A stretch of 64,000 nucleotides of DNA from Heptranchias perlo (taxonomy: Eukaryota), in assembly GCF_035084215.1 (NCBI RefSeq), contig NC_090340.1, forward strand, positions 3,658,001 to 3,722,000. The letters run 5' to 3'. Within the stretch, counting starts at the first letter, position 1. Every line of letters starts with the position of its first letter. The notes below the pieces were generated by a model that saw only the letters and a program-made list of their open reading frames with translations, did not search any database and was not told the DNA's origin. Below are positions 33,810 through 57,649 of the stretch, piece after piece. The position numbers and the translations under genes were made by a program.

Positions 33810-33834
33810 TCATGTCCTGTTTCTTTTCGGATCT
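33810..33834 (-). CDS. Gene B exon 5: short cytoplasmic tail (R)DPKRNRT*
   Basis: Acceptor cttctgctttttgtgtttag|; read in phase 2 to follow the TM exon. Confidence 0.6.
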
Positions 33835-36800
33835 CTAAACACAAAAAGCAGAAGATTGTTTAGATTATTTCTAATTATTTGATCACTTGACCACTATCAT
33901 TGGTTCCTGATTTTGTTTTCAACCCAAATGCATTTTTTTAGCGTCTCACTGTGAGTTCCCCCAATTTCTGTCGAAGTTGAAGCAGAAGATCGGGTGAGCT
34001 CCCCGCAGAACATGCTGGCGTTTTATATATAAACGATAAATCAGTGAAGATGCTAATTCGTAGATCTTTAATTTGGCTCAAACAAACTTAGTTTCAAATG
34101 GCTTTGTTACAAATAGCAAATTCTTCACCCGGCTTCGACGCAACTTCGACCAATGCAACAGGGCAACCGCGCATCAATCTATTATTCTGTTCTTTTTCAG
34201 GAACGAAAGTTAGGGAGATGACCCCCAAGTGGGATTCTGCCCTCATGATTATATTTGTTGAACAAAGAACCAGACGATGAACGATGGGTGCATAAATTTG
34301 CGATTAACAACGGGTCTCACTCTAACTTCGGCAGGAGATCTGGGAAAGTCCCAGGTAAATGGCATAACCTGAAAACTGCAATTTACCTGTTCGTCTGGAG
34401 CTTCCCTGGAAGTGATGTCATTTTCTCAGTAATCCTGTTCAATCGATTGGGGCCTGGAATTCCAGGGGTGTTCTCCCGCTTTCCTTCCATACCGTTGATA
34501 GGGAAGCCAAGAAAAAAATGGCTGAAACCGCTGAAATGGTCGTTTGCGCCCTTCAAGTTGCGTTTCCACCTGTCCAATATCGATGTTAGGCGGGACATCG
34601 GTTGATATTTTGGAGTCTTGGATAATAAATGCTTCTCCAGGCACAATTTAGGCGGTAATACTCTTCCTGACGAATGTAATTTCGCGGGTTCTCCCCGACA
34701 TCCCGTGTAACTTTGGCGGTCGATAATTGAGACCTCGGGAAAGCAGATAAAACCTACAATGCATACCAATTCGCCAATGTTTCCGCTGAAGTTAAAGCGG
34801 GAGATTGGGAGAATCAGACAGCAACTCACCTCTTCCTCTATTCCGGTAATTCTATGGAGCTCTTCATCCACTTTTTAAAGGAAATTTGTACAATTTATGA
34901 TAACAGTAGACTGAATTATCGGAGATTCTCCCTATCCGCCGCTGTAACTTCGACAAAAAACTTTTACCAGCGGTTTAGCGGGAGAACCCTGACGGAAGAT
35001 TATCCCTGATAAGCGGGACTGTCCCGCAGATATTCACTCAATTTTATTATAGATAATTTTATATTAGAATAATAATTGTTGGGAATACTGAATGAAATCT
35101 TACCTTTTGAAACAAATCGTTTTGCGGTAATCCACAATGATGATTGCCAGCATCTGAATTAGGTAAATGGCCGATATATATCGGGATATCAAAACAATTC
35201 GGAAAAAATTATCAGTACCTGCAAGATGTACATAAAACAGAAGTGCGGTGCTTTATATTCCACTAAGAAACGTCACAATAATAGTACATAAATAAACGAA
35301 TGAATGAATAAATGCATGGATGAATAAATACGTGAACGAATGAATGAATGAATTAATTATACAGAGGAAGGGCGCAAATTGCTGTTTCAGTCCTGTAGTT
35401 TTGCTAACTTGATTATTTTTATTGATATATCTATTTTGCGACGACAACTTTCACTGTATTTGCTTTTTAGAAATGTAACAACATGATCATCACAATATCA
35501 GGCTTTAGCTCCGTTACTCTAAATATTGAGTTGTATTTTTCACAAGAGCGTTTTCCCCTTTAATAATTATGTGGTAATATTTCAGCAAAATACGAAATGA
35601 TGAAATGCCAACAGGAGAAATGTTTATATTTTAAGAGTGTTCAATGAATAAAGAATTGTTTAGACAGAATCCGATCACACGTTTTTCTGCTATATCCAGT
35701 ATGTAATTCAGATCCAAGTTACTGCGAAACCTGGTGGAGTAGTGGCTTATGTGTTGTACTTAAGTTCGATCTGAACATTGTAAGTTGGCTGGGCTTGGCT
35801 TTGCAATATCTCAATAGAGCATTGGAACAAATTGCATTTTCTTTTCATGATATAAACCAGCGATTTAATATCCCAATATTATTGATATTGAAACTAAACA
35901 ATACTCCGTTAGAAATCGATGCAAAACAAAGTTAGGCTGAAAGGGCGCCTGTGAATTTTGTCATAGGTCTATGAATAATTAGGCTGATTTCAATTTTACC
36001 TCGAAGGCAATGAAGGAAAATAAAATGTCTGATTCTGTGTCCAGAGTTCATAGTCTTGAAGCAGCGCTGAATACGAGATCCAGAACTTTCCGAATTTCCA
36101 TCCTTTTAAAATAAAGGGACGGAGGATCATGCACCGCCTATTCATAGTTTCTGGCCAGCGCTGCCTGTCATCCCTGCTCCGCTCCAGGACTGATGGCCCG
36201 CCGAAAAAGCCCTAAAGGGGTAGATTTTGAGCTGTCTCTTAAGCGAATGACCGAGTCCAAAGCCTCATTACTAAAACGGCCGCAGACGGCTCAATATTTT
36301 CAGTCCAATGATTTCAGTTGTGAGAAGTTTCTGCGCGATTATTCAATAAAAGTTTCCGATCCGACCTTCATACAGGAATATCTACCCAAAGTTTACATTA
36401 TGAAAATAAGTCTGATACGTTCAATGCCTCATATCCTGTTCTATAAATAAAATATTTTTTGCGGGATATGGGCGTCGCTGGGAAGGCCCACGTTTATCGC
36501 CCAACCCTTGAGTGACTCAGAATGCTTTCTGACAGGTAAATATCCCTAACACCAATTTTGGCACATCATCAGGTGAAGATGATTCTGAACCTATCAGATT
36601 ACTACTATTTTTCCAAACTGTGTATTTGAGTAGAGAATGTGGCACTATTTACAAATGTTTTTCTCCTTCTAATGATCGTCTCGTCATATCATGTTCTATA
36701 AATCAGAATAGTGGGATAAAATGATCCCAGGCGCCCTGTTTGTCTGAGGACAGATTCTACTGCAACCAGTCAACTGAGGGCGAATGTAGCCTGAGTTTGC

Positions 36801-39800
36801 TTTTGCCGATGCTGCTGTTGGGCCAATGTGGCTCTTACTCGCCCGGCACTCTCATGCTCAACGACAATGGTGCATCAGTAGCCGGACAGCAGCGTTTCAA
36901 TAAGTATTCGGCTTTCTGCACTTTTGCAAGCTAGTTTCAAAATGATCTAATTTCACATTTTATGCACTCAGGACTCAAGGCCTTGAAAACAGAGAGTGAA
37001 TTGCGCCTGCTCGCGCTTTGCAATTATCTTCGCCTTCTACCTCGCTTCTTTTCAGGATTATGATTAGTATTAGCTCCCTGGGGTGCATTTTCAACGTGCT
37101 GCCGGGTCGTAAAAATGGCGTTGTGCATCAGCGGATATATTGAAGCCTCAGGTGGTTTCTCTATCGGGCGGCCGACCAGGAACGCCAATTTTACACCCGG
37201 GCCGCTAGTTAAAAACCTACCCATTTATTTATATTGTATGTCACTCCACCTACATCTTAGTGAAGTTATTTTCTTACCTGCGCACGGCAAGTGAAAGGAG
37301 CTTTAAAATGATCCCAACTGAACTTTCGATGCGATCAGTCTTGTTTTTTTTTACCTTTCTTGTTTGTTAGACATTTCACCATTGCATATTTCTTTGAATA
37401 GGAAGTTTGTTCCATTTTTTTTCATTTAAACCTTGCCGCTTGATTCCACCAAACCAACAAACCTGCGACCGCGAGCCGCTACGCCTCACCGCAGCACGAA
37501 GCACAGCAGCAAATGCAAAATGTCATGCTTTTCCGCCAAGAGGACATGCAAGTGCCACTTTAAGAAGCTTTTAAGTCTATTTCTCCTACTGCATAGAAAA
37601 GCACGCTTTCCGTTTGTGACTCTGAACACACTGAGAGCGGACCAGCTGCATTTTAATGATGGGAGAGCGGAAAACCGATGGAAGTGAGCTTTGTGGCCGA
37701 ACAGCGCAAAATGTTACGGCCAAAATATGTAACATCGCTACGTTACTGGGGGCAAAATTTCCGGACCGAGCTTCTATCCTTTACCCTCTTGTTCAAAAGC
37801 TACCTATATCTGTGACACACTGTTGAACTCTGCCGCGTTAACGATTTAATTTTCTCCAGAACTGGGTAACTCCATTTTCCCTATGGATAAACATGCCCTC
37901 TGGCGATCATCCCTTACCGTGAGTGTCCCCGGGGCCCTGAATTCTTTGAGCAGTGATCCAACCTGTCCTTCCCCACCGCCGTCCTCTGCCTCGATGGACT
38001 TAATCATCCCTTGAACAACTTCTCTTTCAACTCCACTCAATTCTTCCCTATCAAGGGGTTAAGATGTGAATATACCTGGATCCCAGTTATGCCTGTATTT
38101 TTTTCAGGCTATGTGGAAATCATTGTTTCAGTCCTACTCTGCTTACATATTTCATCTCTGATTATTTTCATCCCTCCTCTGCATTCACTTATGGTAAAGG
38201 ACTTTGCACAGATCGTCGCTTACAAACCTATTGACTCTAAATACTGCATGAATTGTGTCTTTCCAAGCCTGCTTCATGTGAAGGCTCCATCGCCTTCTCC
38301 CACTTTATCTTTGTCAGATCTTCTCTAATCACACAACTTGCCATGCCAGAACAACCAATTCTTCCACACTACGACGATGAACAGGATCCTTTACTGTTTC
38401 TGTCCTATCTCCCAGACTTCAATGGAAATAAAAATCGGGGGATGGAAAACGGGCTGCTTATTGTCCAATACCTGTTTCAGACCATTGCACAAAGTCAAAG
38501 TTACCGCCAGTGTCTTTCAAACTGCAGCCATGCGGTTCGAAAGTTCATTTTAGTAACTTCAAAGGCATGATATGCTGTATTTTCTCTAAGGCAGGGGATG
38601 CTTGAGATGTGCTCTGTCCGTGTCCAAACGTATGGAAGGTGGATTGATGTTTGGGAACTCGTTGTCAGAATATAGCGTAGATTGCTTTCTGAGTCTGTGA
38701 TGTTGATTTGTGACTTCATATTATCAGGAAAGGAGCCATTCCAATTTAGCTTTTTAATTAAAATATGTTGCATTTCCACTCTGTTTGTGTTCGTTGGTTT
38801 CAATTCAATGTTACAGGAATAAATCCAGAACTATTGCAACATAGGATGATTCGACACTGCAGTTACTGGTCTGTAACAACAGCGGCAGTTCGAGTTCCAG
38901 ACAGGCAACGTCATCTTTAGATTGCTGGAACTGTAAGGGATAAGATTCCCGCGAGCTTTTCGTGCTTGCCGGCATAATGCCGGTGCAAAAATCATGAAAC
39001 GGTGAAATTTAGATTATTTCATACTTTTGTTTAATGCAAAATACACTCCAATGTATTGGTTCACTTTGCGGTTAACTTTTTTTTCCTTTGTTCGTCAATG
39101 AAGTTTAAAATGTTTTTCAAATTCTTCTCTCAATCCGCCAGATCCATATTCACTCTCTGATATCTTTTAAAGTCTTTCTGCTGCCTCACTCATGTTTCAT
39201 ACCGTCTAGCAGTTTTAGTTAAGCACTTTATAGTAACATTAGTCCCTCGTTGCAACTGGATTGCATGTAGATTCTATCCATCTTCCCTTCTCCCTCTCCT
39301 TTTCAAACCAAGTCGGTTCACCTTTTAATCTTCAGTTTTGATGAACGAATACTCACCGATACACCGTGACCTCTACTTTCTCTCCACAGATGTTGTCTGT
39401 CCTGTTGTGTATTGATTTTCTTCTTATTTCAGATTTAGAGCTTTAGCCCTTTTTGATTAGATTTTAATTTGCGTCTGTATGGTAAGTGATTCGACTGGAC
39501 CAGTCGCTGGGCAAGGTCTACCCGACTCCCGAATCAAATTCAAATAACATGAGCTTTATTATAGAAAGTCAGAGCAAGTCTGAAAGGTTTATTATTTATT
39601 CACGGCTTTCCCATAGATAAGTTCTACCTTTCTCACAAAACATTCTCAATCAGGCTGCCTTCAGCTGGATATGGATCTGGCGGATTGAGAGCAGAATTTG
39701 AAAAACATTTTAAATTTCATTGACGAACAAAGGAAAAAAAAGTTAACTGCAAAGGGAATCAGTACATTGGAATGTATTTTGCATTAAACAAAAGTATGAA

Positions 39801-42800
39801 ATAATCTAAATTTCACCGTTTTATGGTTTTTGCACCGGCATTATGCCGGCAAGCACGAAAAGCTCGCGGGAATCTTACCCATTACAGTTCCAGCAATCTA
39901 AAGATGACGTTGCCTGTCTGGAACTCGAACTGTCGCTGTTGTTACAGACCAGTAACTGCAGTGTCGAATCATCCTATGTTGCAATAGTTCTGGATTTATT
40001 CCTGTAACATTGAATTGAAATAAATAAATACCTGCAGGTTATCATTATTCCGGCATCTTACCAGGGTTCCAAATAGTTTCCAAATAAACAGCTAATCTCG
40101 GAGTCTGGAAGGCGGTGTGAGATACCAAACAAGTAAAATAGGTCCATCTCTGGAGTGGCTGTGTCTCTTGCAGAATACTGGAAGCTTCATACAGTTCCGC
40201 TGAGTTCAGCTGCTTCGTGGTTTTTGCCATGGTTACAATGTTCCTTTTATTGTTATACCAGCTGAGAGTGAGAGTCTCCTGGTTAAAGCCAAGCGCTTCG
40301 CATACGATGATCAGATAAATATTTGAATTTCCGCCGGGCGTTTTGGAGACAATCGTCGCTGGAGCTGGCGGAGCTATAGAGGGGTACAGGTAAAGCAAAA
40401 CAAAACACGTCGTTTTAAATTTAGAAGATTATTTACTTTAGTATTGCATTTCCCCAAATTCAAATCAATTAAGATGATTCATAATCAGCATGTGTTTGTT
40501 GCATTTCATTGAAATGAAAATAATACTATTGTACATATTTGCCGGACATCTGCTACTATTATAAATGCTCAAGAATCAGCTGTATTTATAATGCGTTTTC
40601 TCACGTCTCTCACAAGCATAACAATAATCTCACATACAGGGAATTACCTTCAATTGCAGTATTTAATGGTTGTAATGTTGACACAACGGGGCCATGCTTC
40701 GACCAGTAAATCCCACAAATAGCAACGAACAGCTCATCCTTTTCTATTGTTACGGATTGACTGGGGAATTCTGGATAAAATAACAGGAAATTGCTTGCAT
40801 TCATTCCAATAATGCAGTGGGATTTTTGGATTCCGCAAAGAAAAGCTCACATACTTGTTGGGATACCTGTCCCCAAATACAGCAGTATTCCCTCACTTCT
40901 AAACTCAAGCGTCAGACTAGATTGATCCTTAAATCCTGCAATATAGCTGGAATTCAAAGCCTGGGAATGCACAGCAGGGCTCCGATCTCCCCGCCCCCCC
41001 CCCCCCCCCCGCGAAACGGCAATAGATCCGCTCGAACCTGGAAAACGGCATATACGCTGTTCATTCAACATTTACGCCGATATTCTGCCGAATTTAGAGC
41101 AGATCATGATCCCAGGAGAAAGTCAATCCTCACTGCAGCTCCCCCTCCCCGAAAAAAAACTACTTTCTGATTTAGAGCAAAAGTGCAATTAACTTTGCTA
41201 AAATAAGACCCTGAGCTGGATATGTGATTTCCCCACCAACTTTCCACCAGATATTCTGAATTAGATGCGGACTAACAGTATGATTAACGCTCTAAATAAA
41301 ACAAAATAAATATCCCGCTCCATCTCACTTTGCGTTGCAATCAGCGCTATGTTTGCAAAAAAATTCAATTTTGAACCTAAGCCGGGGTCCAGTTACCAAT
41401 TAGGGCAGTTTTGAGGAAAAGTATATAAGGACATAATCATAATGTTTATTTTTAAAAGTCAGATTATTAACACAAATAGGCGTCTGTTACTTTCACTGAC
41501 TTCAATTGCGGAACGAAACTTAAAAACAACGGTGATTACAATCCAAAAACAGATGATTTATGTGGTTGCATCCTTAGAGTCTGAAACTGCTTTATAAATT
41601 AAATTCCAATTTGATTTATGAACATTTTTAATATAGCTGTTGCTGGAACGTTATTTTACATGGACTCCCAGATATATTGATGGGAACTGTTCCCACATCA
41701 TTGGTTGGTATTAATTTTAGAATTGTTTTATGTCTTTGTACTCGACAATACATTTTGAAACGATCAAACTTTCAGCCTTTGGATTTGTGAGAATGTACCC
41801 AATGTGATCTATTTTTACAATCACAACATTACATGCATTCCCTACGGATACAGGTCATTCCACTCAAGTTGGTAATAAAGCATCGACAATTTATTTCATA
41901 ATTTCTGTAATATTACCTGAGCTTGAGTAACAATATATATTGTTTCAAAATAAACATGAGGTACAATTCGCGCTGATTTTAACTTGCAATTTGTGCGTTG
42001 AAGGTATTTAACGTAGATTTTCATTGTGAATATTCAGACGTAATATCACGAATCCATGATAATAGATACAAGAAAGGTACAGGTGCCATTTTTAGGTATT
42101 GAAATTATTTGTCACACAATTCGTACCAATTTACGGAAAACGATGTACACAAAAACACCGATTGGACCATCCAGTCTGTTTCACACAGTTGTAATGCCTT
42201 GTGCATCACAATATATACACGCCACCCTACCCGGTGTCGCGTTATTTCCTGGGAGAGGCAAAGAAACAGATAAAAAACAAAGATAATTCGGGAAAATATC
42301 TCGCATATTCCTCTCCGACGATTGAAATAAGTCCAGGACATTACTCCGGGCCTGATTCCAACGACCCCATCCCCTGCAATATCACTTACTGTGGACAACA
42401 AGATTTGATCCAGTTCCGTTTCTGATCGTATTTCTCTGGTGTTTGTCTCCGCAGTAATAAATCCCAGCAAGCTGGAGACGGACATCAAGGAGCTGGAGAG
42501 AACCCTGCCCTATCCTAATTAAAAATAGTTTCTTCCTGTCTGAGTTTGTTTGCAGAAATACGGTTTCGCCGAATCTCCACCAGTAAACATTCACTTGTGA
42601 ATTAGCTGGAAAAGGAGTGAACGCACAAGCGAAGGTAATGTTTGCACCGGCCATAACAATCTTGCTTTGGGGACTTTGTGACAATTGAAACACGGCATTG
42701 CCATCAACTGTGTAAGAAAAAAAAAACACATGTAAACTGCAACTAACCAAGTCAAACCTGATGGAAAATGGTTGATAGATAGAGATAGACAGTCGGGTAG

Positions 42801-42902
42801 CAACAGACCCCAAGATAGATATAAAAAGAGGAGATTACGGAAATAACCTGTGAAGATCATCTCCAGAATTACAATGTACTGAAGCACAGCGCGAACAAAC
42901 AT
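33810..42902 (-). CDS. Gene B (whole span): non-rearranging VJ-C1 IgSF receptor, activating type, 5 exons, 274 aa
   Basis: join(complement 42902-42848, 42707-42390, 40373-40062, 35218-35104, 33834-33810) = 825 nt, open frame, all GT-AG, intron phases 1,1,1,2. Confidence 0.8.
35104..35218 (-). CDS. Gene B exon 4: transmembrane exon containing Arg
   Basis: acatcttgcag|GTDNFFRIVLISRYISAIYLIQMLAIIIVDYRKTICFK|gtaaga; 115 nt versus 114 nt for the gene A TM exon; shared G-x-D-N start and C-(F)-K end. Confidence 0.8.
37880..38330 (+). mobile_element. Degenerate Penelope-like RT fragment
   Basis: LNNFSFNSTQFFPIKG...GYVE resembles the Penelope RT motif region. Confidence 0.55.
38798..40020. repeat. 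Inverted duplication: 352-bp arms (38798-39149 and 39669-40020), ~520-bp spacer
   Basis: Arms are reverse complements with about 12 mismatches by hand count (~96% identity). Confidence 0.95.
40062..40373 (-). CDS. Gene B exon 3: C1-set Ig domain
   Basis: cccctctatag|TPPAPATIVSK..LIIVCEALGFNQETLTLSWYNN..LYEASSILQ..FTCLVSHTAFQTP..NP|gtaaga; C-x-V-x-H motif. Confidence 0.9.
42390..42707 (-). CDS. Gene B exon 2: V domain with J-like G strand in the same exon
   Basis: ttcttacacag|VDGNAVFQLSQSP..GANITFAC..VYWWR..SLQLLDV..AGIYYC..NGTGSNLVVH|gtaagt. Confidence 0.92.
42848..42902 (-). CDS. Gene B exon 1: signal peptide MFVRAVLQYIVILEMIFT
   Basis: ATG at 42902; hydrophobic; ends ACAG|gttatt in phase 1; resembles the gene A leader end (ILVLEITYT). 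Confidence 0.75.
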
Positions 42903-42911
42903 ATTGAAGAA

Positions 42912-43018
42912 AGGAAGTTATCGTTTGCTGCCAATAAACGGGAAACTTTTTTTTTAAATAGCGAAACCATCTCGTCTAATCCCCTATAAACTATGAAGCA
43001 ATCACATGTGACACCACA
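42912..43018. promoter_or_regulatory. Candidate proximal regulatory motifs of gene B (ETS, E-box, RUNX)
   Basis: aggaagt 42912-42918, cacatgtg 43003-43010 and accaca 43013-43018, all within 120 bp of the ATG; short motifs only. Confidence 0.3.
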
Positions 43019-44167: not shown

Positions 44168-45115
44168 GAATAGGTAAAGCACAGGAGAAGGCTATCGTGC
44201 CTGTGCCGGGTCTTTGAAAGAGCTATCCAATTCGTCCAATTCCCCTGATCTTTCAACATTGCACTGTACATGTTGTCCCCCAGTATTTATTCAATTCCCT
44301 TTTGGAAGTTACTGTTAAAACTGCTTCCAACACCATTTAAGGCACTGCACTCCAAATCACTACAACTCACTGCATAAAAACAATATTTCCTCATGTGGCC
44401 TCGGGCTCATTTTCCAATCACCTTAATACTATGTCCTCTGGTTAGCGACCCTTCTGCCACTGGAACAGTTTCTCCTTATTTACTCTGTCAAAACCGTTCA
44501 AAATTTTGAACAGCTCTATCACATCTCCCTTTAACGTTCTTTGTTTTAAGACAAACAACCCCAGCTTCTCTAGTCTCTCTACAAAACTGAAGTCCCTCAT
44601 CCCTGGTACCATCCTGGTAAATCTCTTCTCCACTCTCTCTCAGGCCTTGTCATCCTTCCTAAAGTGTGGTGCCCAGAATTGAACATAATACTACAAATGA
44701 GGCCCAGCCACTGTTTTATATAGGTTTAGCATAACTTCGTTGCACCTGTACTCCGTGTCTCCTTTAATAAAGCGCACGAACCCATATATATATTTTTAAC
44801 AACCTTGTCAACCTGCCCTGCCACCTTCAAAGATTTGTATCTCTGCACCGCCAGGTCTCTCTGTTCCTGCACCCTGGTTAAAATTGTACCATTTAGTTGA
44901 TAGTGTGTCTCCTCATTCTTCCTACCAAAATGAATAACTTTACAATTCTCTGTGTTAAATTTGATCTGCCATGTGTCTGCCCATTTCACCAGCCCGTCTA
45001 TGTCCTCCTGAAATCTATTACTATCTTTCCCATTGTTTACTGCATTTCCGAGGTTTGTGTCATCTGCAAACTTTGAAATTATACGCTCTATACTCAAGTC
45101 CAGATCGCTAATGTA
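44168..45115 (-). mobile_element. CR1 LINE 3' fragment
   Basis: ORF 44726-45118 YISDLD..SKFADDTNLG; ORF 44442-44633 RFTRMVPGMR. Confidence 0.88.
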
Positions 45116-46802: not shown

Positions 46803-47250
46803 ACATAGAATCATGCAGTATAGAGGCAGGCCATTCGGCCCATCATGCCTGTGGAGGCTCTTCGAAAGACAGGTCCAGTTAGTCCTATTCCCTTGGCTTT
46901 CCACATAGCCCTTCATTTTTTCCCTTTAAAAATATATATCCAGTTCCCTTTTGAAAGTTACAATTCAATCTATTTCCACCACCCTTTCAGGCAGTGTATT
47001 CCATAACAACTCACTCTGTAAAAAAAATCTCCCAATCTGCACCCTGGTTACCGACTCTCCTCCAAGTGGAAACAATTTCTCCTTATTTATTCTACCAAAG
47101 CCCTTCATGATTGTGAACACCTCCATTAAATCACTCCTTAACCTTCTCAACTCTAAGGAGAACAATCCTAGCTTTTCTTGTCCGTCTAGATAAATTAAGT
47201 CCCTCATCCTTGTGTATCATTCTAGTAAATCTCCTCTGCACCCTCTCCAC
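46803..47250 (-). mobile_element. CR1 LINE 3' end
   Basis: KLGLFSLELRRLRSDLMEVF..WNTLPERVVE; tail catagaatcat. Confidence 0.85.
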
Positions 47251-47539
47251 CGTTGATACGCTAAGCTGATTTGTCGAAATCATCTATGAGGAGCAGTGGT
47301 GAATGACGATTTTGTTTCACCATATCATCCGGAAATACACCAGGGTATGCCAGCATTCAGTAAAATTCAATTAATGAGAAGTTACAAGCGTAGACGCCTT
47401 TAGCGAATTCTTTTGTCCAAAAAAGATTAGCAAAGCACAACACAACTGCAACAGCAAGTATGTTCCATTCAACAATTGGAATTGCGACGCAGCGGCTATT
47501 TGCATGTAGACATATAATCAGTTCAAATATTTAATAAAC

Positions 47540-47746
47540 GCAAAATACTGCTGATACTGGAACTCTGAAATAAAAACAGAAAATGCTGGAAACACTCAGC
47601 AGGTCAGGCAGCATCTGTGGAGAGAAAAACAGAGTTAACGTTAACTCTGATGAAAGGTCATCGACCTGATACTTTAACCCGGTGCCTCTCTCTACCGGTG
47701 TAGCCTGACGTGCTTGGTGTTTACAGTATTTTCTGTTTTTATTTCA
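47540..47746. mobile_element. Penelope-derived imperfect hairpin with a decayed hammerhead core
   Basis: tgaaataaaaacagaaaatgctg ... cagtattttctgtttttatttca; central ctgatga-aaggtcatcgacct-gata. Confidence 0.65.
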
Positions 47747-48029
47747 AGGATTTAATATCTTAGAGTAATAAGCCAACGTCGTAAAGCTACAGCAGAGGGC
47801 CACCCTCAAGCTCAACACCAAAGGATGTAGGTTATTGACAGAGCGACGCAGTCTTACTACCAACCTCCAGATAAAAACTCTCTAGCTTTATAGCATTTAT
47901 TTTGCAATTATGTTTGGCAATCAGGCAACCAGCGACCATGCACTTCCCCATCACCATCTATGGTGGCAGGGCCTGTGTGTAATGTTCAGCCAAAAGTGCG
48001 AAGTGGACAATTCAACACAGTCTCCCTCT

Positions 48030-49390: not shown

Positions 49391-50184
49391 GATGCACTGT
49401 AATAATCAATTCATCTACAATAGACTCAGAAATGACACGGGAAAAAAACCTACTGATGGAGAGCTTAACTAAGCATTGGTCTAAAGTCACCTTGTTCCTC
49501 CCAAGAATGCTACACTTACCAGATGTCATGTCTCAAATTACTCATATGCTGACGTTCTTCGATTAATCGAATTTGTACGAAATAGGGTTGATGTAATTTA
49601 GTGCTAACTGTTATATAGGCAACAGATCACCTTGTCTTATCTATTTCGTGTCTTACCAGTAATACGACGTGGCTTTTATAGGAAAGAACCCAGTACACAA
49701 CGGTGTTGCTATCAGAAAGGGTTGAACTGAATTATTTCGCTAAAGATTTTAAACGATTTATTAATGTCTGATTTAATATAAGTGGCAAAGGAATGTCATA
49801 CATCAGGAAAGGATTTGAAGGCAGAAACAAATTGGGTGAAGTGAATGCCATACACTGTGAAAAGTGATAAGTCAAGGTTGACGGAAAACAAAACATTGAA
49901 ATACCAGAACGTCATTTTAATCATTGGAGAATGCAGCTTTGTTAAACATTAAGCAATTGATTACAAAAGGAAGGAATAAAATTCGAAGTGACTTTTTCAA
50001 GAAATCAACTGTATTAATATTTTAAGTCTTGACCACTTGATTCATTTGATGCATTTGTCTTTTAAAACTTGTTGCTCTTGAAAGTATAATGGCAGAATTT
50101 CAACGGAAATGGTTACAGTTGCAACAGCAAAGGCAAGCGCAAGCAATTTGTACGAATATAATGGTCTCTGAATAGGTGAACAAA

Positions 50185-50358
50185 TTATGTGATTTTTGTT
50201 TCGGTGTAGATGGTCTTTGCTGTTCCTCTTTGGGCTTCTATTGGTAACTGCGCATAGACTGAACTATTGACCTTTCGTTTAGGCTTTTCTTTTTTCTTGG
50301 ATTCAGCCAATTCCAGCGCAGCGTATGTCAGATTGTTCTCTGCTGTCCCTTGCTTTGT
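50185..50358 (-). CDS. Gene A exon 7: terminal cytoplasmic exon with ITIMs
   Basis: cgttttacag|TKQGTAENNLTYAALELAESKKKEKPKRKVNSSVYAQLPIEAQRGTAKTIYTETKIT*; LTYAAL and SVYAQL fit (I/V/L/S)xYxx(L/V). Confidence 0.88.
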   Translation of the reverse strand, partial: TKQGTAENNLTYAALELAESKKKEKPKRKVNSSVYAQLPIEAQRGTAKTIYTETKIT

Positions 50359-53300
50359 CTGTAAAACGATCGTTAGGGAATACCATCAGTACATGGCCAG
50401 TGTTATGAGTCAAAGTAACAATCACAAGTAAGAAAGCCAACACGGAATGCGATTTAAATATACCAGATTAGCAAAACAATATAGTGACTCCGCTACCAGG
50501 GTGACCCGTTTTTTATGTTGCCTACCTGGGCATACACAGTCCTCTCCTCTTGATACTTGGCTCTTGCAGTTTTCATTGACCTGGTCAAATTTAATACAGC
50601 GTAAGGCGCTGTCTCATTCGCCGATCCCTGCACAGATCGCAAAGTAATGCATATTATATAGTTTATTCATTACATTTGTGACATTGTAGCTTATTGATTA
50701 CTCATTGAACCCAACGGTCAGTAGTACTAAATCCGGAGATGGAAAGTGAAACATTAAAGCAAGTTTTTACTCTTTCAATAATATAATAGGATATAATTAA
50801 GGCACCATATATAATAATTTACTCTCACGATGTGGACTACGGTCATATTATAACTAAAGTTGTTACACAAGTTACAATTTAGTAATTGCTACGTGTGATA
50901 GCACATAGGCCTAATGAAACCTAAATACTTTGAGGCGCATGTACCCGCGAGTTTATAGTTTACTTGTATGTTGTTGCTAATAACTACATCAGCATTATAG
51001 TATGTACATCATGTCTTTCGGAAACGATTTCAAAATGTAGCAAACTAGATTTAATACATGTAAGAGATAAATTGAATTTAGACTTTTCTCGCTGAAATAT
51101 GAAAGAAACAATAATTCTGTATTTTAAATGGTCTGATGGTTTCTATTCAGTAGCGAAATAACGAATTTCAGTCCAGCGGATTAATCGTACGAAGAAAGTA
51201 TTTCATGCTTAACCTCACTACCCATTTTCACTTTACACGTCAAACGCGGTAGAATGAATGATAAGAACCTACCGGAACTTTGGGGTGCTGTGGTCGCTCC
51301 ATGACATCCCTTGTTCCTGGTAATGAATGGCATTGGAGATTTCCTCATCAATTATTTGATATATCATTCTCCATGATTCCAAATCCATTTCAGGCAGGCT
51401 TAATGGACAGTCCAACTTTATGCTCAGTAACACAACCTAAAACTTCCTCGATACCTAAATCTATTCAATGTTCACTCTCAAATACCCATCCCCCGATTTC
51501 GTGAAATTACTGGGTCTTAATCGAATCTGATCCCACGGGGTCTAGAGCCTTCCTATTTTGACGCGTAATAAACTTAATGTTTGAGCCTAGAGGATGAGTC
51601 TTATCAGTTTACTTGACGGGAAAACGCACCACATCAGGTCCAGCCGTCCACTCACTTCCACACAGGTAATATACCTGCAGAAATAGGTCACAGCACTTTG
51701 ATCCGAAACAATACCCATTGTCCTATCCTCTGTTAAGAGGTAAAAGGCGATTCGACTGCCTCATCGCTTTGGGACAGATTATTAAATTCAGCGCATAAAA
51801 TCTGCTGACCCATCTCCCTGGCTTCTATCACCAGTAGCGCACCACGCCATCCATTTACACTAGAGAAGAAAGAACTCATATTTAAACAGCGCCCTCCACT
51901 GCGCTAAAACGTCCCAAACAGATTCACAGCCAATGAAGTGCTTTTGAAGTGCAGTCACTGTTGTAATGCAGGAAACGCGAGAGCTGATTAGGTACAGCAA
52001 GTTTCCACACACAGCAATGTGATCAATAGGGAATTAAACTGTTTTACTGATGTGGATTGGGGGGTAAATGTTTGGCAGGATACCGAGGGACCTTTCTTCT
52101 TCTTTCGTAAATAGTGTCATGAGATTTATTACTTCAACCTCATAGAGCAAACGGAGTCTCGGGTTAATGTCTCATCCGAAAGCAGTCCGTCAGTGTTGCA
52201 CTGGGGAGTGGGCCTAGTTAATGTGTTCATGTCTCTGAAGAGGAACTTGAACCCACGGCCTCGGACTATGAGATGAGAGTGCTACCGCTGAGCCAAGGCT
52301 GAAAGCAATTTATTTTATCGCCTCCCGAGGCATCTTCACTTGATCAAGAATATACTGAAGGACACGTGGAACTGATGTTAACTGGATTCTTTCCTACCTT
52401 TGCACTTGATCAATGGACATTGCTTCCCAATGATTATCACGAGAAATACAACTAAGATGCCAACTCCTGCGGATCCATAGACTTGTATGTACCATAATAC
52501 ATTGTCACCTCCTGCAAAATAAATGTCACTTATAACATTTCAAGTTGTACATTGTGACAAAGTGTTCTGCAGTCCCACAGATCAATATCTCTTACCAACC
52601 CTATGAACAGCTATTTCAATGTGTTGGTGTCCCACAGCATGAGGAGACAATTAAAACATTTAATGAGTCATTTTCTCCGTTCTTTAAATGGCAATTTTAT
52701 TAAAAATTCAGAGTTTTTAGTTACCTCCATTCGGTCTCTGTGCATTGCGGAATACGCTGTGTTCACAATGACACGGATAACAATTGGCAATTCTAATTTT
52801 AGGTGTTGTTTGGACGAAGCGACAGTTTATTTCAGGCATGTATGTGCAGTCATATTAACCTTCTTATATTTCCTTTTCCATTTTCAGTCGTTACCTTTAT
52901 TTAAACTATTTAAGCGAACTTTTCTATTGCGTGAAGCGTAACAGTTTACCACAACCCACCAACTCCCCCCACCCCCCCACCCCCCACACCCCCCACCGAC
53001 CAAACATTATTCAAGACGATTATGGCTGGTTTAAAATTCTTATATCACTTGTTACATTATCCCAGTTAAAAATGAGTTCGATATGGAGGGTGATTCTAGA
53101 TCGGTCGCCAATTGTTAGTGAACCAGTTGGGCTGATGAGAAATTCGGCCAGCTTCATGGTTACTTTTACTGAAAGCAGCATTTTGTTTCCAGATTTTTCT
53201 TTCAACTGCCGTCCAATTCTCAAACTACCATGCCGAGATCATTAGTCCATGCTCTGGATTTCTGTTCCAGTAACATAACAATTATACTACCGTACCTCTG

Positions 53301-56300
53301 CTCTCCATTGAATAAAGTACAGTACAAAGACCCATTCGCCAACAGGCCTGGAACTGTCCCATTCATCCATGTCCTTGTTCCTCTGAAGAGTTCTAACCCA
53401 TCAATGCACTTTTAACGGACTGTGGACGGAATTGCGCAAATGCCACATACCGTCCATGACTTTAACTATCAGTCTTGGCTCAGTGGCAGCACTCTCGCCT
53501 CTGAGTCGGAAAGTCATGAGTTGAAGTCCTGCTCCAGAGCCGTCTGAACATCATTGGACCTATATCGTCGCTGGGTCATAATGCTCGAAACTCTACCTTA
53601 CAGCATTGTGGAAGCAGTTTCACCACATGGACTCCAGCGGTTCAAGAAGAAGGCCCACCCCCACATTCTCAACGGTAACTAGGGATTGGCGATAAATCAA
53701 GGCCTTGCCAGAGACGCCAATATCCCGAGAATGAATTGAAAAAATCTAAGCTGGAACTTCCATTTAGTTAGAAGATGTTGTTTGCATTTGTGAGAATTGG
53801 TTCTTACCTCCAGTACTGGTAGAAAAGAATCGGAAGTCGGCTGCCGTTTGGACGGTGAGGTGAGATACCTGGCAGGTAAAAATAGTCCCACTCTCCACAG
53901 AGTCTGCCTCTTCCAAAAAGCTGGACACTTCATAGAGACCTCTTGCATTCAGCTGTTTGACTGTGTTTATGCCGGTGTCAATGTTCACACCATCCTTGTA
54001 CCAAGTAATATTGATATTATCTGGGTAAAACTCCGCAGTTTTACACACAACAATCAGAGAAGCAGATGTGTTCCTTTCAGCCTCATTGGCGGCAATATGC
54101 AGTGGGGTTGGGGGAACTGTATAGCAAGTTACAGAAGAGGTTAGTACCTACTAGGATCTTTCGGAACGTCGGAAGTTATTCTATTTCTACTAGATCATAG
54201 TCATTGCGATATTAATAATTTATACACATCAAATGGCATGTTCATTTATGGAAACGTTGGGTGAATTTTCAACTTTCTGTCTGGGTGGAATGCAGGCGAA
54301 GCGGATCAATCACTCGGCGTCGAGTTGAAAATCTACCCCATTAACTTACAGAATACAATTTCTAACGAGACACTGGCAAGCTAAGCAATGATACCTTATA
54401 TATCAATGCTCGAAAAAATATAGATGGACGATAGAAATGTATGGAGGGTCATGAAATCACTGTAACAAATACATCTCTCAACATAACTCGCAATTAAGAA
54501 CAAGTAAAAAGGGGTTCAATTGTTAATATGGTTTGCAGTAGTTCGCATTTTGACGTTCTAACTTTTTAATTTTAAAGAATGATCGATTCACGATCAAATT
54601 GCTTTAATACTGTATATATTAAAAAAACAGATTGAAAACCATTCATCTCAACTGGAATATTTTGAAAAGTTGTCAGAAGTTTAGTAACTTCCGAGGCAGT
54701 TTTAGAACGTTAGAGAGGATTTTGAAGTAGTTATTGGGAACAGTTTTGGAAAGGTTAAGTTGAAATACAGCTAAAGGTAGTTGAACAAGAGAGGTAAAAG
54801 AAGAACATAAGCTGGAAGAAAGGGAAAGCTGTACATAATAGACAAACAGGAAAGGTGCGGGGGACTCGTCGTAGAGGGACCCAATGATTAAACCAGAATG
54901 CTGCAGAGTGAGAGATATAACGCTTTGAATTCAACAGTTAACTTGTCACCTAAGCATACATGTTATTCGTCATGTTCTCAGTCAAGAGTCAGGTTTAATA
55001 GTGAACGTCTACCAGTCGTCCTCCCTAAAATACATTCTACTCAGTTAAACCCAGCAAATGATGTTCCATCGTCGTAGTGAAATGAGATTTATTGCGCTCC
55101 GTGTGTTGATTTAAATATTGTTTATCTATGCTAATATCAATAATGTATTTGTAACGATATTAATGTATCAGTAATGTTGAACCTCATATTCGTTACAAGT
55201 TGCATCTTAGTAGAAGCAATTAAATAAAATCATCAATGGCAAATATGTGTCACGATCAGTCCTTGGTAGCATTATATTTAAATGTCACTTTACTGAACGT
55301 TATATTGCAGTGCTGTCCATTCCAAAATGTTAATTAATTCGGAACGTCTGTACATGAAGCAAGGCATTGAATAAGAATTTAAATGTAACTTCCAAAAGAA
55401 ACAATGCAAACTCGTGGATGCCTCACACGTGGATCATGATAAAATATTAAAAAGCAGCCGGTACCGTTTTTTATTTTGTTCGCTTTCCAAGTTTGTGAAA
55501 TAATTTCAGGTACAAATTCCACTTACCGTGGATAAGAAGTTTTGATCCAGTTCCATTAGCAATCCGACCACCCGGATATTTCACTCCGCAGTGATAAACT
55601 CCAGAGTCCTCAGCACTGACATTCAGGAACTGAAGACAGGCCTCACCTTTCTTCAAATGAATAAATCGTTTTCTGCTGTTTGAACCTAACTTTAGAAACT
55701 CATTTTCGCCGAGTTTCCACCAGTAAACACTCACATTTGAATTATCTTGAAAAAGAGGGAACTCACATTGAAAAGTAATGTTTCCACCTGCGATCACCTG
55801 AGCACTTTCAGGGGCTTGGAACGCTCTGATCTGCGCATCTGCAACAGCTGTGAGAAAACAAATGCAGCAACAATTATATATATCGCACACACACTGCTTG
55901 CGGACAATAATTATCAATCTTTGGTAGTAAGAAGCATTTGCAGATGATTCAATGTAATCTTTGAGGCAACAATGTATGATATGACAAGCCTTAGCTGTGC
56001 TGTCTGTAATTAGTTGATTTTACTCAGTGAAATCCGTAGCATTTATTGTGCCTTATTTTCCAATTTCTATTTTCAAAGTAACCTGATATGTAGCGCAGAC
56101 CACACCTGTAAATGTAAGTTGTACATGCCTTCTCTGACAGATGTTGAAGGTCAGATGGATCAAACATGGAGCAGATCAACTGAGATTTGGCTGATACAAA
56201 GCAGGGATTAGGTTCTTGAGGTAACTCCGGGACGAAAGGACTTCATTGAAAGATTTTTCTTGTATTATGTTCATGTGCCCTGGCAATACATACGATCACC

Positions 56301-57649
56301 ATATTCACTTTGACAATCGTCTCGTGGCACTGATCATAAATTATGGACTATAACCCTCACGTCTTTCTCCCACGAAATATCCTTGAGCATACCAGCCGGC
56401 ATCGTGCATAAATGGGGTTGTCTCTATCCAAGTGCATGTCGCTATATGCGTCCATATTAAAATATATCTACCAGACACGATTCATTATTTCATTGAATCC
56501 AATTTGGTCTGCAGTCGAATTTAATTTTATCTAAGTTCCTTATATCCGCACATATGTTCGTGCAAACTATATATTTGCATATAGCTTCCATTATGCCTCT
56601 GCCCAAATAGTGGATACATAATGCAATGGTCCTTGCATTAAGCCATTAATAACTCTCTTCTGTGCCCTGAATGTAACAACCCAATCAAAATCCGCTTGCT
56701 GATCCTCCAAGATCCAACCTGCGTTAGTAGCCTTTTATGCAGAATTCTAGCAAACTATTTTAAAAAGTTTAAATTCACAATATCAAAATGGCTTCTATCA
56801 CCTTCCAAATTTGTAAATTATTGGAAAAATGCAAGCAAGTTGTTGAGACAGAACCTTCTTTTTCAGAAGACATGCCTAGATTCCCTAACAAACCATTCTC
56901 TTTTAATGTGATAGTACAGCGCATATCTAATGATCCTATAGTTTCGAGGTTCTCACTTTGTGCGATTTGACATAGAGGTACGACATGGCCCCTCACGGAT
57001 CCATGGGAACAATCCCACACAGGAAAGAACTGTTAGGTATGTGTGCAAATGGCTAATATAACATCATCCACATTTATTGGAACACACTCGGGTGAATGCC
57101 TTCAGGGCCAGCATAGCGATCAGATTTACCACACTAATTGCAGCAAGGACTGCATCCGTATGCAGATCAACAGGTTCAATTTTAACATCAGCCTCATGTT
57201 TTATTATTGGTAAAACGGCATCAGTGTCAGCAGGGAAGACAAATGCAAAATAACCTTTTAAAACCCCTGTCAGATGCTAAGACCCTGCTGAATCTGCCCA
57301 GGCGATCGTTCAATTGCCTTGTCCATTCTTTGATGAGCCTATGATGTTTAACATAGCTGAAAAAGAACTTGCTTTGCTACCACGACTTTTCACTATATTT
57401 TTACTAGTGTCCTTGTGGCTACTCATTCAGCAACTTGTATTTTCCCTAATGCCCGAACCTCGGGGCTTACATAATCTTGGATTTGTGAACGAAAAAAAAA
57501 ACAATAATAACAAGAAACAACTAAAAAACATACCATAAAACACAAGAGATGAATAGAAATGTAGAACACAGGGAAATACCTGTATATGTAATCTCCAAGA
57601 CCAATATCCAGGGAAGTATAAACATGTTTAGAAATAGAATTGACTGCAT
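50185..57649 (-). CDS. Gene A (whole span): non-rearranging VJ-C1 IgSF receptor, inhibitory type, 7 exons, 377 aa
   Basis: join(complement 57649-57580, 55847-55527, 54116-53808, 52511-52398, 51316-51273, 50627-50526, 50358-50185) = 1134 nt, open frame, all GT-AG, intron phases 1,1,1,1,0,0. Confidence 0.85.
50526..50627 (-). CDS. Gene A exon 6: cytoplasmic exon with ITIM/ITSM-like motifs
   Basis: tctgtgcag|GSANETAPYAVLNLTRSMKTARAKYQEERTVYAQ|gtaggc; phase 0-0. Confidence 0.82.
51273..51316 (-). CDS. Gene A exon 5: short juxtamembrane cytoplasmic exon
   Basis: cattcattaccag|GTRDVMERPQHPKVP|gtaggt; the only open phase 1->0 candidate I found between the TM exon and exon 6. Confidence 0.65.
51865..52303 (-). 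mobile_element. tRNA-derived Deu-type SINE (intronic)
   Basis: Minus-strand head tcagccttggctcagcggtagcactc...gggttcaagttcc (A and B boxes), conserved core and tail ending in tatgagttctttcttct. Confidence 0.75.
52398..52511 (-). CDS. Gene A exon 4: transmembrane exon, uncharged
   Basis: tttattttgcag|GGDNVLWYIQVYGSAGVGILVVFLVIIIGKQCPLIKCK|gtagga; phase 1-1. Confidence 0.88.
53469..53745 (+). mobile_element. SINE tRNA head followed by a LINE 3' tail fragment
   Basis: tcagtcttggctcagtggcagcactc..gttgaagtcc, then ttcaagaagaaggcccacc..gggattggcgataaat as at 25550-25610. Confidence 0.6.
53808..54116 (-). CDS. Gene A exon 3: C1-set Ig domain
   Basis: cttgctatacag|VPPTPLHIAA..LIVVCKTAEFYPDNINITWYKDG..GLYEVSSFL..FTCQVSHLTVQ..STG|gtaaga; FYP and CxVxH are C1 hallmarks. 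Confidence 0.93.
54258..54340. mobile_element. Small MITE-like element with terminal inverted repeats
   Basis: gggtgaattttcaact ... agttgaaaatctaccc; similar termini occur elsewhere (36217, ~37220). Confidence 0.45.
55527..55847 (-). CDS. Gene A exon 2: V domain with J-like G strand in the same exon
   Basis: gttttctcacag|AVADAQIRAFQAP..GGNITFQC..VYWWK..LQFLNVSAEDSGVYHC..NGTGSKLLIH|gtaagt; DxGxYxC motif. Confidence 0.95.
56330..57480 (-). mobile_element. Highly degenerate CR1 LINE in intron 1 of gene A
   Basis: Colinear similarity with the CR1 RT region at 4900-6100 (e.g. tctagcaaactatttttaaaaagt..ttcacaatatc). Confidence 0.5.
57580..57649 (-). CDS. Gene A exon 1: signal peptide MQSILFLNMFILPWILVLEITYT
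   Basis: ATG at 57649; hydrophobic; ends ACAG|gtattt in phase 1. Confidence 0.8.

What the first reader, a model, noticed from the sequence alone, without database searches (positions are those of the whole stretch)
33810..57649. Paired inhibitory/activating receptor system built on an antigen-receptor-like, germline-joined VJ-C1 ectodomain
Seen: two tandem minus-strand genes with the same leader/V/C1/TM exon plan and phase-1 domain introns; the V domains are about 45% identical by hand alignment. Each V exon already contains the J-like G-x-G-S-x-L-x-(I/V) strand, and I saw no RSS heptamer at the exon ends. Gene A has an uncharged TM and ITIM-bearing tail; gene B has a TM Arg and an ~17-aa tail. 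Established: V plus C1 is the architecture of Ig light and TCR chains; C1 domains are otherwise largely confined to MHC/b2m, tapasin, SIRP and B7-family proteins; ITIM versus charged-TM pairs define paired receptor families (KIR, LILR, SIRP, CD300, NITR). Inference: this is a cartilaginous-fish paired innate receptor family resembling the proposed pre-RAG antigen receptor precursor. Related non-rearranging VJ or VJ-C1 genes are known (NKp30/NCR3, PRARP, amphibian MHC-linked VJ-C1), so novelty needs checking.
Basis: partly seen in the sequence, partly recalled or inferred. Interest (0 to 1): 0.9.

Follow-up and report, generated by a model that had tools for sequence, protein, structure and literature searches.

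The report
Shark V-C1 inhibitory/activating receptor genes
Two neighbouring shark genes belong to a large cartilaginous-fish family of antibody-shaped but non-rearranging surface receptors: one is an intact inhibitory receptor, and the other is an activating-type copy that may be decaying.

Summary
The sequence observation largely holds. Two minus-strand genes each have leader, V, C1 and TM exons with phase-1 introns. The V exons carry a J-like strand, are 46% identical, and have no RSS.

Gene A is an annotated Heptranchias perlo gene (XP_067854360.1, near-identical to XP_067853494.1, auto-named "SIRP-alpha-like").

Gene B was not among the database proteins found. Its Arg-bearing TM exon is real: it matches the TM of short-tailed relatives in six species, including a chimaera.

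- A and B are not a matched pair. B's ectodomain is 75% (V) and 69% (C1) identical to another inhibitory paralogue.
- Spliced RNA-like contigs confirm B's C1-to-TM splice. They also show a different 3' exon, an extra exon before C1, and one extra T that destroys the TM frame.
- B deviates at 5 of 25 conserved positions.

The family has at least 107 stored models. Every family-like protein whose source I saw is chondrichthyan. It has both ITIM and charged-TM forms. Its V-C1 unit scores similarly against Ig light chains and SIRP-alpha. None of my searches of the held library found a paper on it, and key papers were not held. First-stage readers noted this family on other DNA of this genome several times.

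The parts
57580..57649 (-). Gene A leader exon (ATG at 57649, phase-1 donor)
   Evidence: Sequence read. The translation is an exact substring of P0151 and P0001.
55527..55847 (-). Gene A V exon (321 nt), germline-joined with a J-like G strand
   Evidence: Pfam V-set 1e-10. Splice sites. 100% match to P0001. No RSS.
53808..54116 (-). Gene A C1 exon (309 nt)
   Evidence: Pfam C1-set 2.5e-13. Splice sites. Exact substring of P0151.
52398..52511 (-). Gene A TM exon, uncharged TM helix
51273..51316 (-).
   Evidence: Present in RefSeq models P0001 and P0151. tblastn 100%. AG/GT sites.
50526..50627 (-). Gene A first two-tyrosine tail exon (Y-Y spacing 23)
50185..50358 (-). Gene A last coding exon with ITIMs LTYAAL and SVYAQL (spacing 23) and the stop codon
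   Evidence: Matches P0151 exactly. P0001 differs by one residue.
42848..42902 (-). Gene B leader exon (140-nt leader intron)
   Evidence: Resembles the P0168 leader. GT donor.
42390..42707 (-). Gene B V exon (318 nt) with a J-like strand; the Asp of the D-x-G-x-Y-x-C motif is replaced by Leu
   Evidence: Pfam V-set 9.5e-7. 75% identical to P0168. Family V-profile score 124 bits. Deviations.
40648..40679 (-). 3' end of an unpredicted exon that the RNA-like contig joins to gene B's C1 exon. It is a possible 123-nt in-frame cassette from 40770.
   Evidence: Loose end of record 4 found at 40650-40679. Donor AAG|GT read. The 5' limit is inferred.
40062..40373 (-). Gene B C1 exon (312 nt); FYP is replaced by FNQ, and a conserved Gly by Glu
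   Evidence: Pfam C1-set 1e-7. 69% identical to P0168. Covered by a spliced contig with 1 mismatch. Deviations.
35104..35218 (-). Gene B TM exon with Arg, of an ancient activating-type class
   Evidence: The C1-to-TM junction is seen in the contig. Similar to the TM and tail of six short-tailed relatives, z 4.5-7.2, with 0-2 of 2000 shuffles reaching the score. Not similar to gene A's TM exon.
35203..35208 (-). T6 run that reads as T7 in both RNA-like contigs, a frameshift just before the TM helix
   Evidence: table 4 and the 19-letter loose end of record 4.
34386..34733 (-). 3' exon actually joined to the TM exon in the RNA-like contig. It lies inside a 163-codon open frame with no known relatives.
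   Evidence: No Pfam family. No homologue found. The 3' limit of the exon was not seen.
33810..33838 (-).
   Evidence: One search shows an acceptor and a short open frame. One search shows a different junction. It lies outside the stretch laid, so its use is not excluded.

Best explanation
The locus holds two members of a large family of type I membrane receptors that, in every source I could see, is confined to cartilaginous fishes. The ectodomain is one non-rearranging V domain with a built-in J-like strand, followed by one C1 domain.

Gene A is an intact inhibitory receptor. Its tail carries two duplicated two-tyrosine modules with two canonical ITIMs, 23 residues between the tyrosines of each module. 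After phosphorylation these should recruit SHP-type phosphatases (inferred).

Gene B joins an ectodomain of a different lineage (that of paralogue P0168) to an ancient Arg-containing TM exon. This exon is shared with short-tailed relatives from chimaera to sharks. That design normally couples to an Asp-bearing ITAM adaptor (inferred).

In this species gene B is probably decaying or polymorphically null. So the paired inhibitory/activating logic holds for the family, not for A and B as a couple.
For: Gene A:
- All 7 exon translations are exact substrings of RefSeq XP_067854360.1 (P0151), and 6 of 7 are exact substrings of XP_067853494.1 (P0001).

Family range:
- 46 of 46 hits to P0001 and 31 of 31 hits to P0168 are chondrichthyan.
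- All 20 clusters of family-like proteins looked up are chondrichthyan too.

Census of 107 stored models:
- 49 have a TM plus ITIM/ITSM.
- 16 have a charged TM and a short tail.
- 16 are other, and 26 have no TM.

Gene B's TM exon:
- It matches the TM and tail of P0197 (Callorhinchus), P0005, P0003, P0165, P0107 and P0045 at z 4.5-7.2.
- It does not match any of 11 inhibitory tails (z at most 1.3).

Trees:
- Gene B sits in the P0168 clade (100/100 in the V tree).
- The Arg-TM type sits on at least 5 V lineages.

RNA-like evidence:
- A spliced contig joins B's C1 donor at 40062 to the TM acceptor at 35218.

Signs of decay in B:
- Both contigs read T7 where the genome has T6.
- B deviates at 5 of 25 conserved columns, against a family median of 1. 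Only 5 of 107 members reach 5.
- B's branches are about 2.5 times longer than P0168's.
- No matching protein model was among the 31 hits to P0168.
Against: - Gene B's genomic exons are all open with canonical splice sites. Its V and C1 score 124 and 110 bits on the family profiles, near the medians of 120.5 and 118. It could therefore be functional.
- The contigs differ from the window at about 4 places in roughly 820 nt, and one contig has an upstream exon absent from the window. They may come from another allele, another individual or a near-identical paralogue. The T7 may then not belong to this copy.
- The runs are only guessed to be RNA.
- SHP recruitment, adaptor pairing and the ligand are all inferred.
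Confidence: 0.68

Rival explanations
1. Gene B is a fully functional activating receptor, and A and B work as a matched inhibitory/activating pair on the same ligand.
For: Open exons, canonical splice sites and near-median profile scores. A conserved Arg-TM exon. The C1-to-TM splice seen in a contig. The two genes are adjacent and share an orientation.
Against: V identity between A and B is only 46% and they fall in different clades. B's V is 75% identical to P0168 instead. Both contigs read T7, a frameshift. An extra exon precedes C1 in the contig. The 3' exon is not the predicted one. B deviates at 5 of 25 conserved positions.
Confidence: 0.25
2. The family is simply the cartilaginous-fish orthologue of the SIRP family, so it is an already characterised kind with the same paired organisation.
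For: RefSeq names many members SIRP-alpha-like or SIRP-beta-like. The two nearest ESM Atlas clusters to P0001 are both SIRP-alpha named, score 0.96. The family profile aligns to SIRP-alpha V plus first C1 in one stretch (65.9 bits), with 46.8 bits for the second C1. SIRP-gamma is also in the top 60.
Against: There is one C1 exon per gene, not two. Ig lambda and kappa V-C units score as high or higher (72.2 and 69.6 bits). No SIRP is among the top 60 of the V-only profile search. The charged TM residue is Arg, not Lys. Automatic names are inconsistent (also tapasin-related, Ig lambda, CD276, NCR3LG1). Synteny was not tested.
Confidence: 0.25
3. The family is the shark NCR3 (NKp30) family or its B7H6-like ligands, already described by the Flajnik and Ohta groups.
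For: Some members are auto-named NCR3LG1-like. Gene A's V matches a frog protein named NCR3 (P0106; 27% identity, E 7e-10), and that protein's best solved relative is human NKp30 (E 2.4e-12). From recall only, the abstract of Kinlein 2021 reports eight divergent shark NCR3 subtypes; I could not read that paper here.
Against: Held papers call NCR3 a VJ-domain gene and present UrIg as the novel VJ-C1 gene (PMC10751288 passages; PMC12227049 section 7). Every gene here has a C1 exon. NKp30 is not among the 60 best of 5827 V-profile matches. No B7 protein is in the top 60 of the full-length profile search, while SIRP-alpha and SIRP-gamma are. Unchecked scan notes place MHC items on other pieces of the genome.
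Confidence: 0.1
4. The genes are relics of the pre-RAG antigen-receptor precursor, that is, close kin of UrIg/UrIg2 and Ig/TCR.
For: A single-exon VJ followed by C1. UrIg2 is the second-best solved match for the C1 and full-length profiles. Ig light-chain V-C units score highest.
Against: The UrIg2 V-C1 unit scores only 50.8 bits. Its rank comes from summing three C domains. The best V-only hits are a mix of Ig VL, TCR, pIgR and PD-L1. An N-glycan sequon sits where antigen-receptor J strands have Phe or Trp (reading of alignment A1). The ITIM and Arg-TM signalling parts are those of innate paired receptors.
Confidence: 0.12

Closest known systems
SIRP family (SIRP-alpha, -beta, -gamma)
   Same: A VJ-type V domain followed directly by C1-set domains. 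There are inhibitory members with paired tyrosine motifs and activating members with a charged TM and short tail. SIRP-alpha is the best non-immunoglobulin solved match for the V-C1 unit (65.9 bits) and the nearest ESM Atlas cluster.
   Different: One C1 domain instead of two. Arg rather than Lys in the activating TM. No closer to SIRP than to Ig light chains in profile score. Seen only in cartilaginous fishes. Ligand unknown and synteny untested.
UrIg / UrIg2 (elasmobranch non-rearranging VJ-C genes; PMC12227049 abstract and section 7 read)
   Same: A non-rearranging single-exon VJ with a split leader, followed by C1-type domains, in sharks. Their C1 domains are mutually similar.
   Different: In the section read, UrIg2 has 9-11 C domains in two sharks, the number varies among species, and both genes are expressed mainly in liver or gill. 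No ITIM is mentioned in that paper (0 occurrences). The genes here have one C1, a TM, and ITIM or Arg-TM signalling parts, and they form a large tandem family.
NKp30 / NCR3 (including the shark NCR3 family, Kinlein 2021, recalled only)
   Same: A non-rearranging VJ-type V. Activating forms have a TM Arg (recalled). There is distant V similarity through frog NKp30-like proteins.
   Different: In the held papers NKp30 is listed only as a VJ gene, while UrIg is introduced as the novel VJ-C1 gene. The genes here all have C1. Human NKp30 is not in the top 60 V-profile hits.
Immunoglobulin light chains and TCR chains
   Same: V plus C1 architecture, phase-1 exons, and a J-like G strand. They give the highest V-C unit scores (69.6-72.2 bits).
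   Different: No RSS and no separate V and J segments. A glycan sequon replaces the J-strand Phe or Trp. The genes here have a TM plus ITIM or Arg-TM signalling parts.
Teleost NITRs and other paired IgSF families such as KIR and LILR (recalled)
   Same: Tandem multigene families mixing ITIM-tailed members with charged-TM, short-tailed members. NITRs also have a VJ-type V.
   Different: From recall, none of these has a C1-set second domain. No sequence link was tested here.
B7 family (PD-L1, CD276, B7H6)
   Same: A V plus C-type ectodomain. PD-L1 V is among the best single-domain V hits. Some members are auto-named CD276 or NCR3LG1-like.
   Different: No B7 protein is in the top 60 of the full-length profile search. 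The alignments to PD-L1 stop before the J-like strand (query positions up to 93). The paired ITIM and Arg-TM forms suggest receptors rather than ligands.

Membership tests
Paired inhibitory/activating IgSF receptor family (functional class) | Closely related ectodomains on ITIM-tailed members and on charged-TM, short-tailed members | tested here: met
   At family level, 49 of 107 models are ITIM/ITSM and 16 have a charged TM and short tail. Gene B's ectodomain is 75% (V) and 69% (C1) identical to inhibitory P0168. It is not met for A versus B themselves (46% V identity and different clades).
Paired inhibitory/activating IgSF receptor family (functional class) | ITIM recruits SHP phosphatases; the charged TM pairs with an ITAM adaptor | not testable with these tools
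   Inferred from motifs only.
SIRP | A VJ-type V followed by two C1-set domains | tested here: not met
   V plus C1 is present, but each gene has only one C1 exon.
SIRP | Sequence clusters with SIRP rather than with other V-C1 proteins | tested here: inconclusive
   SIRP-alpha scores 65.9 bits against 72.2 (Ig lambda), 69.6 (Ig kappa) and 50.8 (UrIg2). The ESM Atlas puts SIRP first. No SIRP is in the V-only top 60. No reference phylogeny was possible.
SIRP | Activating member has a TM Lys (DAP12 type); synteny with the SIRP region; CD47 binding | tested here: not met
   The conserved TM charge is Arg. Ligand binding is not testable.
NKp30 / NCR3 | A single VJ-type Ig domain without a C domain | tested here: not met
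   Both genes have a C1-set exon. All 107 census models pass the C1 profile because that was a selection criterion.
NKp30 / NCR3 | Linkage to the MHC (class III) | not tested
   Only unchecked scan notes exist, and they place MHC items on other pieces. The window itself holds only the two genes and retroelement fragments.
UrIg / UrIg2 | A VJ followed by several C1-type domains | tested here: not met
   There is one C1 exon per gene. UrIg2 has 9-11 C domains (PMC12227049 section 7).
Rearranging antigen receptors (Ig/TCR) | V and J as separate segments flanked by RSS | tested here: not met
   The J-like strand lies inside the V exon. No RSS was found.
B7 family | V-C ectodomain clustering with B7 proteins | tested here: inconclusive
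   PD-L1 V is among the top single-domain V hits (E 3.4e-7, 9.4e-10). No B7 protein is in the top 60 of the full-length profile.

The most novel reading that the evidence does not exclude
This is an undescribed receptor family shared by chimaeras, sharks and rays, and so old enough to predate their split. It is the cartilaginous-fish counterpart of SIRPs and NITRs, built on the same VJ-C1 unit as antigen receptors. One ancient Arg-containing TM exon has been moved repeatedly onto the ectodomains of at least five different inhibitory lineages to make activating partners. Individual activating copies such as gene B are then lost again through frameshift alleles.
Probability: 0.35. Interest if true: 0.7.

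Novelty: new variant of a known kind. Interest (0 to 1): 0.5.

Why it matters
Cartilaginous fishes are the oldest living lineage with Ig, TCR and MHC. Their innate paired receptors are poorly charted.

If undescribed, this would be a large family found in sharks, rays and a chimaera. It puts a non-rearranging VJ-C1 ectodomain on ITIM and Arg-TM signalling parts. It would do three things:
- It would show that the inhibitory/activating pairing was already in place at the base of jawed vertebrates.
- It would give a concrete case of a single activating TM exon being shuffled among ectodomain lineages.
- It would add VJ-C1 genes to compare with UrIg, SIRP and Ig/TCR when asking what kind of gene the RAG transposon invaded.

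For this window alone the yield is smaller. It holds one annotated inhibitory gene and one unannotated, possibly dying, activating copy.

Tried and rejected
- I tested whether gene B's TM exon is a copy of gene A's. It is not: shuffles reached the observed score in 151 of 500 trials for nucleotides and 730 of 2000 for protein.
- I looked for a P0168-like uncharged TM exon or middle tail exons downstream of gene B. tblastn found only the last-exon look-alike at 2911-2753.
- The 163-codon frame at 34874-34386 had no Pfam family. The word-based protein search gave no hit (9 candidates, none scored; only proteins of 0.55-1.75 times its length are seen).
- Searching gene B's TM exon in the scan's own notes gave nothing.
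- A words search of the notes for SIRP-region marker genes gave nothing.
None found a paper on this family. The PRARP search returned only unrelated uses of the acronym in its 15 listed rows.
- Kinlein 2021, Flajnik 2012, Flajnik 2023 (UrIg) and Ohta 2019 were not held. A description there cannot be excluded.
- No supplementary files were consulted.
Full-length comparisons used database proteins by id.

Full report
**What is in the sequence**

On the minus strand there are two genes with the same plan.

Gene A exons:
- leader 57649-57580
- V 55847-55527
- C1 54116-53808
- TM 52511-52398
- a 44-nt exon 51316-51273
- two tail exons, 50627-50526 and 50358-50185

Gene B exons:
- leader 42902-42848
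- V 42707-42390
- C1 40373-40062
- TM 35218-35104

All internal splice sites are AG/GT, and the leader, V, C1 and TM introns are phase 1. Pfam calls V-set (1e-10 and 9.5e-7) and C1-set (2.5e-13 and 1e-7). The V exons are 46% identical over 97 aa and the C1 exons 40% over 90 aa.

Each V exon runs through a J-like strand (N-G-T-G-S-x-L-x-I/V). No consensus heptamer lies in or within 60 nt of a V exon. No heptamer-plus-nonamer site occurs in 33000-58500. The rest of the window holds retroelement fragments (RVT_1, zinc knuckle), which I only observed.

**Identity of gene A**

I ran a HMMER search with the V exon against 1.84 billion representative proteins. It gave 377 proteins at E up to 0.001, and the best 150 were listed. 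The top hit, P0001, is XP_067853494.1 of Heptranchias perlo, auto-named SIRP-alpha-like.

All seven exon translations are exact substrings of its cluster mate P0151 (XP_067854360.1). Six of the seven are exact substrings of P0001, which differs by one residue in the last exon. A near-identical second copy may therefore exist.

Without it the TM exon (phase 1) cannot join the first tail exon (phase 0).

The tail has tyrosines at P0151 positions 432, 455, 469 and 492. That makes two modules with 23 residues between their tyrosines. Two motifs fit the ITIM consensus: LTYAAL and SVYAQL. The TM is uncharged.

**The family**

- Word-based searches with P0001 gave 46 hits and with P0168 gave 31 hits. 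All are from sharks, rays or the chimaera Callorhinchus.
- All 20 further clusters of family-like proteins that I looked up are also chondrichthyan.
- The automatic names are inconsistent: SIRP-alpha/beta-like, tapasin-related, Ig lambda-like, CD276 homologue, NCR3LG1-like, MHC class II beta-like.
- A last look-up covered ten less similar proteins from the HMMER list. Seven were multi-V, and three were proteins without family hallmarks. Nine of the ten came from turtles, squamates and frogs, and one from Callorhinchus.
- One of those, frog P0106, has human NKp30 as its best solved relative (E 2.4e-12). It is 27% identical to gene A's V.

Among the stored proteins of up to 600 aa, 107 pass both the family V profile (over 50 bits) and the C1 profile (over 40 bits). 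Of these:
- 49 have a TM plus ITIM/ITSM
- 16 have Arg or Lys in the TM and a tail under 45 aa without such motifs
- 16 are other
- 26 have no TM

The set includes isoforms, near-duplicates and partial models, so these are rough proportions.

First-stage readers noted similar VJ-C1 genes at many other places on this chromosome and on other pieces of the genome. None of those notes showed a follow-up.

**Gene B**

Its V is 75% and its C1 69% identical to P0168, an inhibitory H. perlo paralogue. In a tree of 53 V domains it sits in the P0168 clade (support 100/100). The 53 rows were the 52 stored proteins whose species I had seen, plus gene B; the other family models were left out. The C1 tree agrees, but it is only the quick version. 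Gene A lies in another clade, so A and B are not a matched pair.

B's TM exon is not similar to A's. It does match the TM and tail of six short-tailed relatives:
- P0197 (Callorhinchus)
- P0005 (Heterodontus)
- P0003 (Carcharodon)
- P0165 (Cetorhinus)
- P0107 (Scyliorhinus)
- P0045 (Chiloscyllium)

The z-scores are 4.5-7.2, with 0-2 of 2000 shuffles reaching the observed score. The Arg and an Asp or Glu at the inner membrane edge line up. B does not match five other charged-TM tails (z at most 2.1) or eleven inhibitory tails (z at most 1.3).

This TM type sits on at least five V lineages in the tree. That fits an old activating exon being recombined onto different ectodomains (inference).

**RNA-like evidence**

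Three small runs from one sample were offered. Their kind is only guessed to be RNA. I laid their contigs on 34900-40500.

- Record 4 (749 nt) covers B's C1 exon with one mismatch. It continues at the predicted donor into the first 19 nt of the TM exon, so the C1-to-TM splice is confirmed.
- Upstream of C1, record 4 does not run directly into the V exon. It continues with window 40679-40650, an exon ending at 40648 with a GT donor. If that exon starts at 40770, it is a 123-nt in-frame insert (inference).
- Record 1 (1054 nt, higher depth) holds the TM exon. It is preceded by 26 letters that are not in the window.
- Both contigs have seven T where the genome has six (35203-35208). That shifts the frame before the TM helix and leads into the 163-codon open frame at 34874-34386. 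This frame has no Pfam family and no homologue found.

The genomic T6 frame is the conserved one, so T7 is a disabling change (inference). It may belong to another allele, another individual or a near-identical paralogue.

**Other signs about gene B**

- It deviates at 5 of 25 columns that are at least 88% conserved in the family. These include the Asp of the D-x-G-x-Y-x-C motif, the Pro of FYP and a conserved Gly.
- The family median is 1 deviation. P0168 has 1. Only 5 of 107 members have 5 or more.
- Its branches are about 2.5 times longer than P0168's.
- No protein model matching it appeared among the 31 hits to P0168.
- Against decay: all exons are open, and the profile scores are near the family medians.

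I put a working activating receptor at roughly 0.25-0.3.

**Comparison with known families**

The full-length family profile (A1, 36 database proteins) against solved structures gave these scores for the V-C1 unit:

| Solved protein | V-C1 unit score (bits) |
|---|---|
| Ig lambda | 72.2 |
| Ig kappa | 69.6 |
| SIRP-alpha | 65.9 (plus 46.8 for its second C1) |
| UrIg2 | 50.8 |

- The V-only profile's best 60 of 5827 matches are titin, pIgR, Ig VL, TCR, PD-L1 and other cell-surface IgSF proteins such as contactins. NKp30, SIRP and CD28-type V domains are absent.
- The C1-only list is dominated by multi-domain Ig chains and UrIg2, because their domain scores add up.
- The ESM Atlas puts SIRP-alpha clusters nearest to P0001, at 0.96.
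- The held papers describe UrIg and UrIg2 as VJ genes with many C domains. They treat NCR3 as a VJ-domain gene.

The family therefore works like SIRP or NITR-type paired receptors and looks like an antigen-receptor chain. It fails a defining feature of each named family.

**Limits**

- Gene A was not checked against reads.
- The key shark NCR3 and B7H6 papers were not held, so prior description cannot be excluded.
Full-length searches used RefSeq proteins returned by the tools.

Noticed in passing
window 2753-2914 (minus strand): A terminal-exon look-alike of the P0168 lineage, open in frame as far as I read it, with a good acceptor. It is 57% identical over 53 aa (E 1e-13), with an ITSM-type motif and a degenerate ITIM. 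No matching TM or middle exons were found in the window.
   Followed up: partly
window 34386-34874 (minus strand): A 163-codon open frame with no Pfam family and no homologue found. Its 3' part serves as the exon joined to gene B's TM exon in the RNA-like contig, and the T7 frameshift reads straight into it.
   Followed up: partly
window 57650-57793 and beyond; protein P0151: RefSeq model XP_067854360.1 adds a 137-aa N-terminal extension in front of gene A's start codon. Its last part is the open frame just upstream of the ATG. It looks like a read-through model rather than real coding sequence. P0001 lacks it and differs by one residue in the last exon, which hints at a second near-identical gene copy.
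   Followed up: no
window 44194-44639 and 46842-47247: Two copies of a repeat, 67% identical over 452 nt, lie between the two genes. Retroelement fragments elsewhere include RVT_1 at 4686-5207 and 22213-22893 and a zinc knuckle at 15792-16397. I only observed these.
   Followed up: no
window about 40990-41010 (minus strand): A run of about 17 G in the V-C1 intron of gene B.
   Followed up: no
proteins P0010, P0016, P0023, P0081, P0106, P0118, P0129: The nearest V relatives outside cartilaginous fishes are tandem multi-V proteins of turtles, a viper and frogs, under assorted automatic names. Frog P0106 is clearly NKp30-like (E 2.4e-12 to human NKp30).
   Followed up: partly
window 40115-40160: A contig of run X2 matches only 46 nt of gene B's C1 exon, with 2 mismatches, and then diverges. 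It probably comes from a transcript of a paralogue.
   Followed up: no
alignment A1, columns of the J-like strand: The family keeps an N-x-T/S sequon at the position where antigen-receptor J strands have Phe or Trp (Asn at least 90% conserved, the following Gly invariant). A glycan there would argue against antigen-receptor-type V pairing.
   Followed up: no
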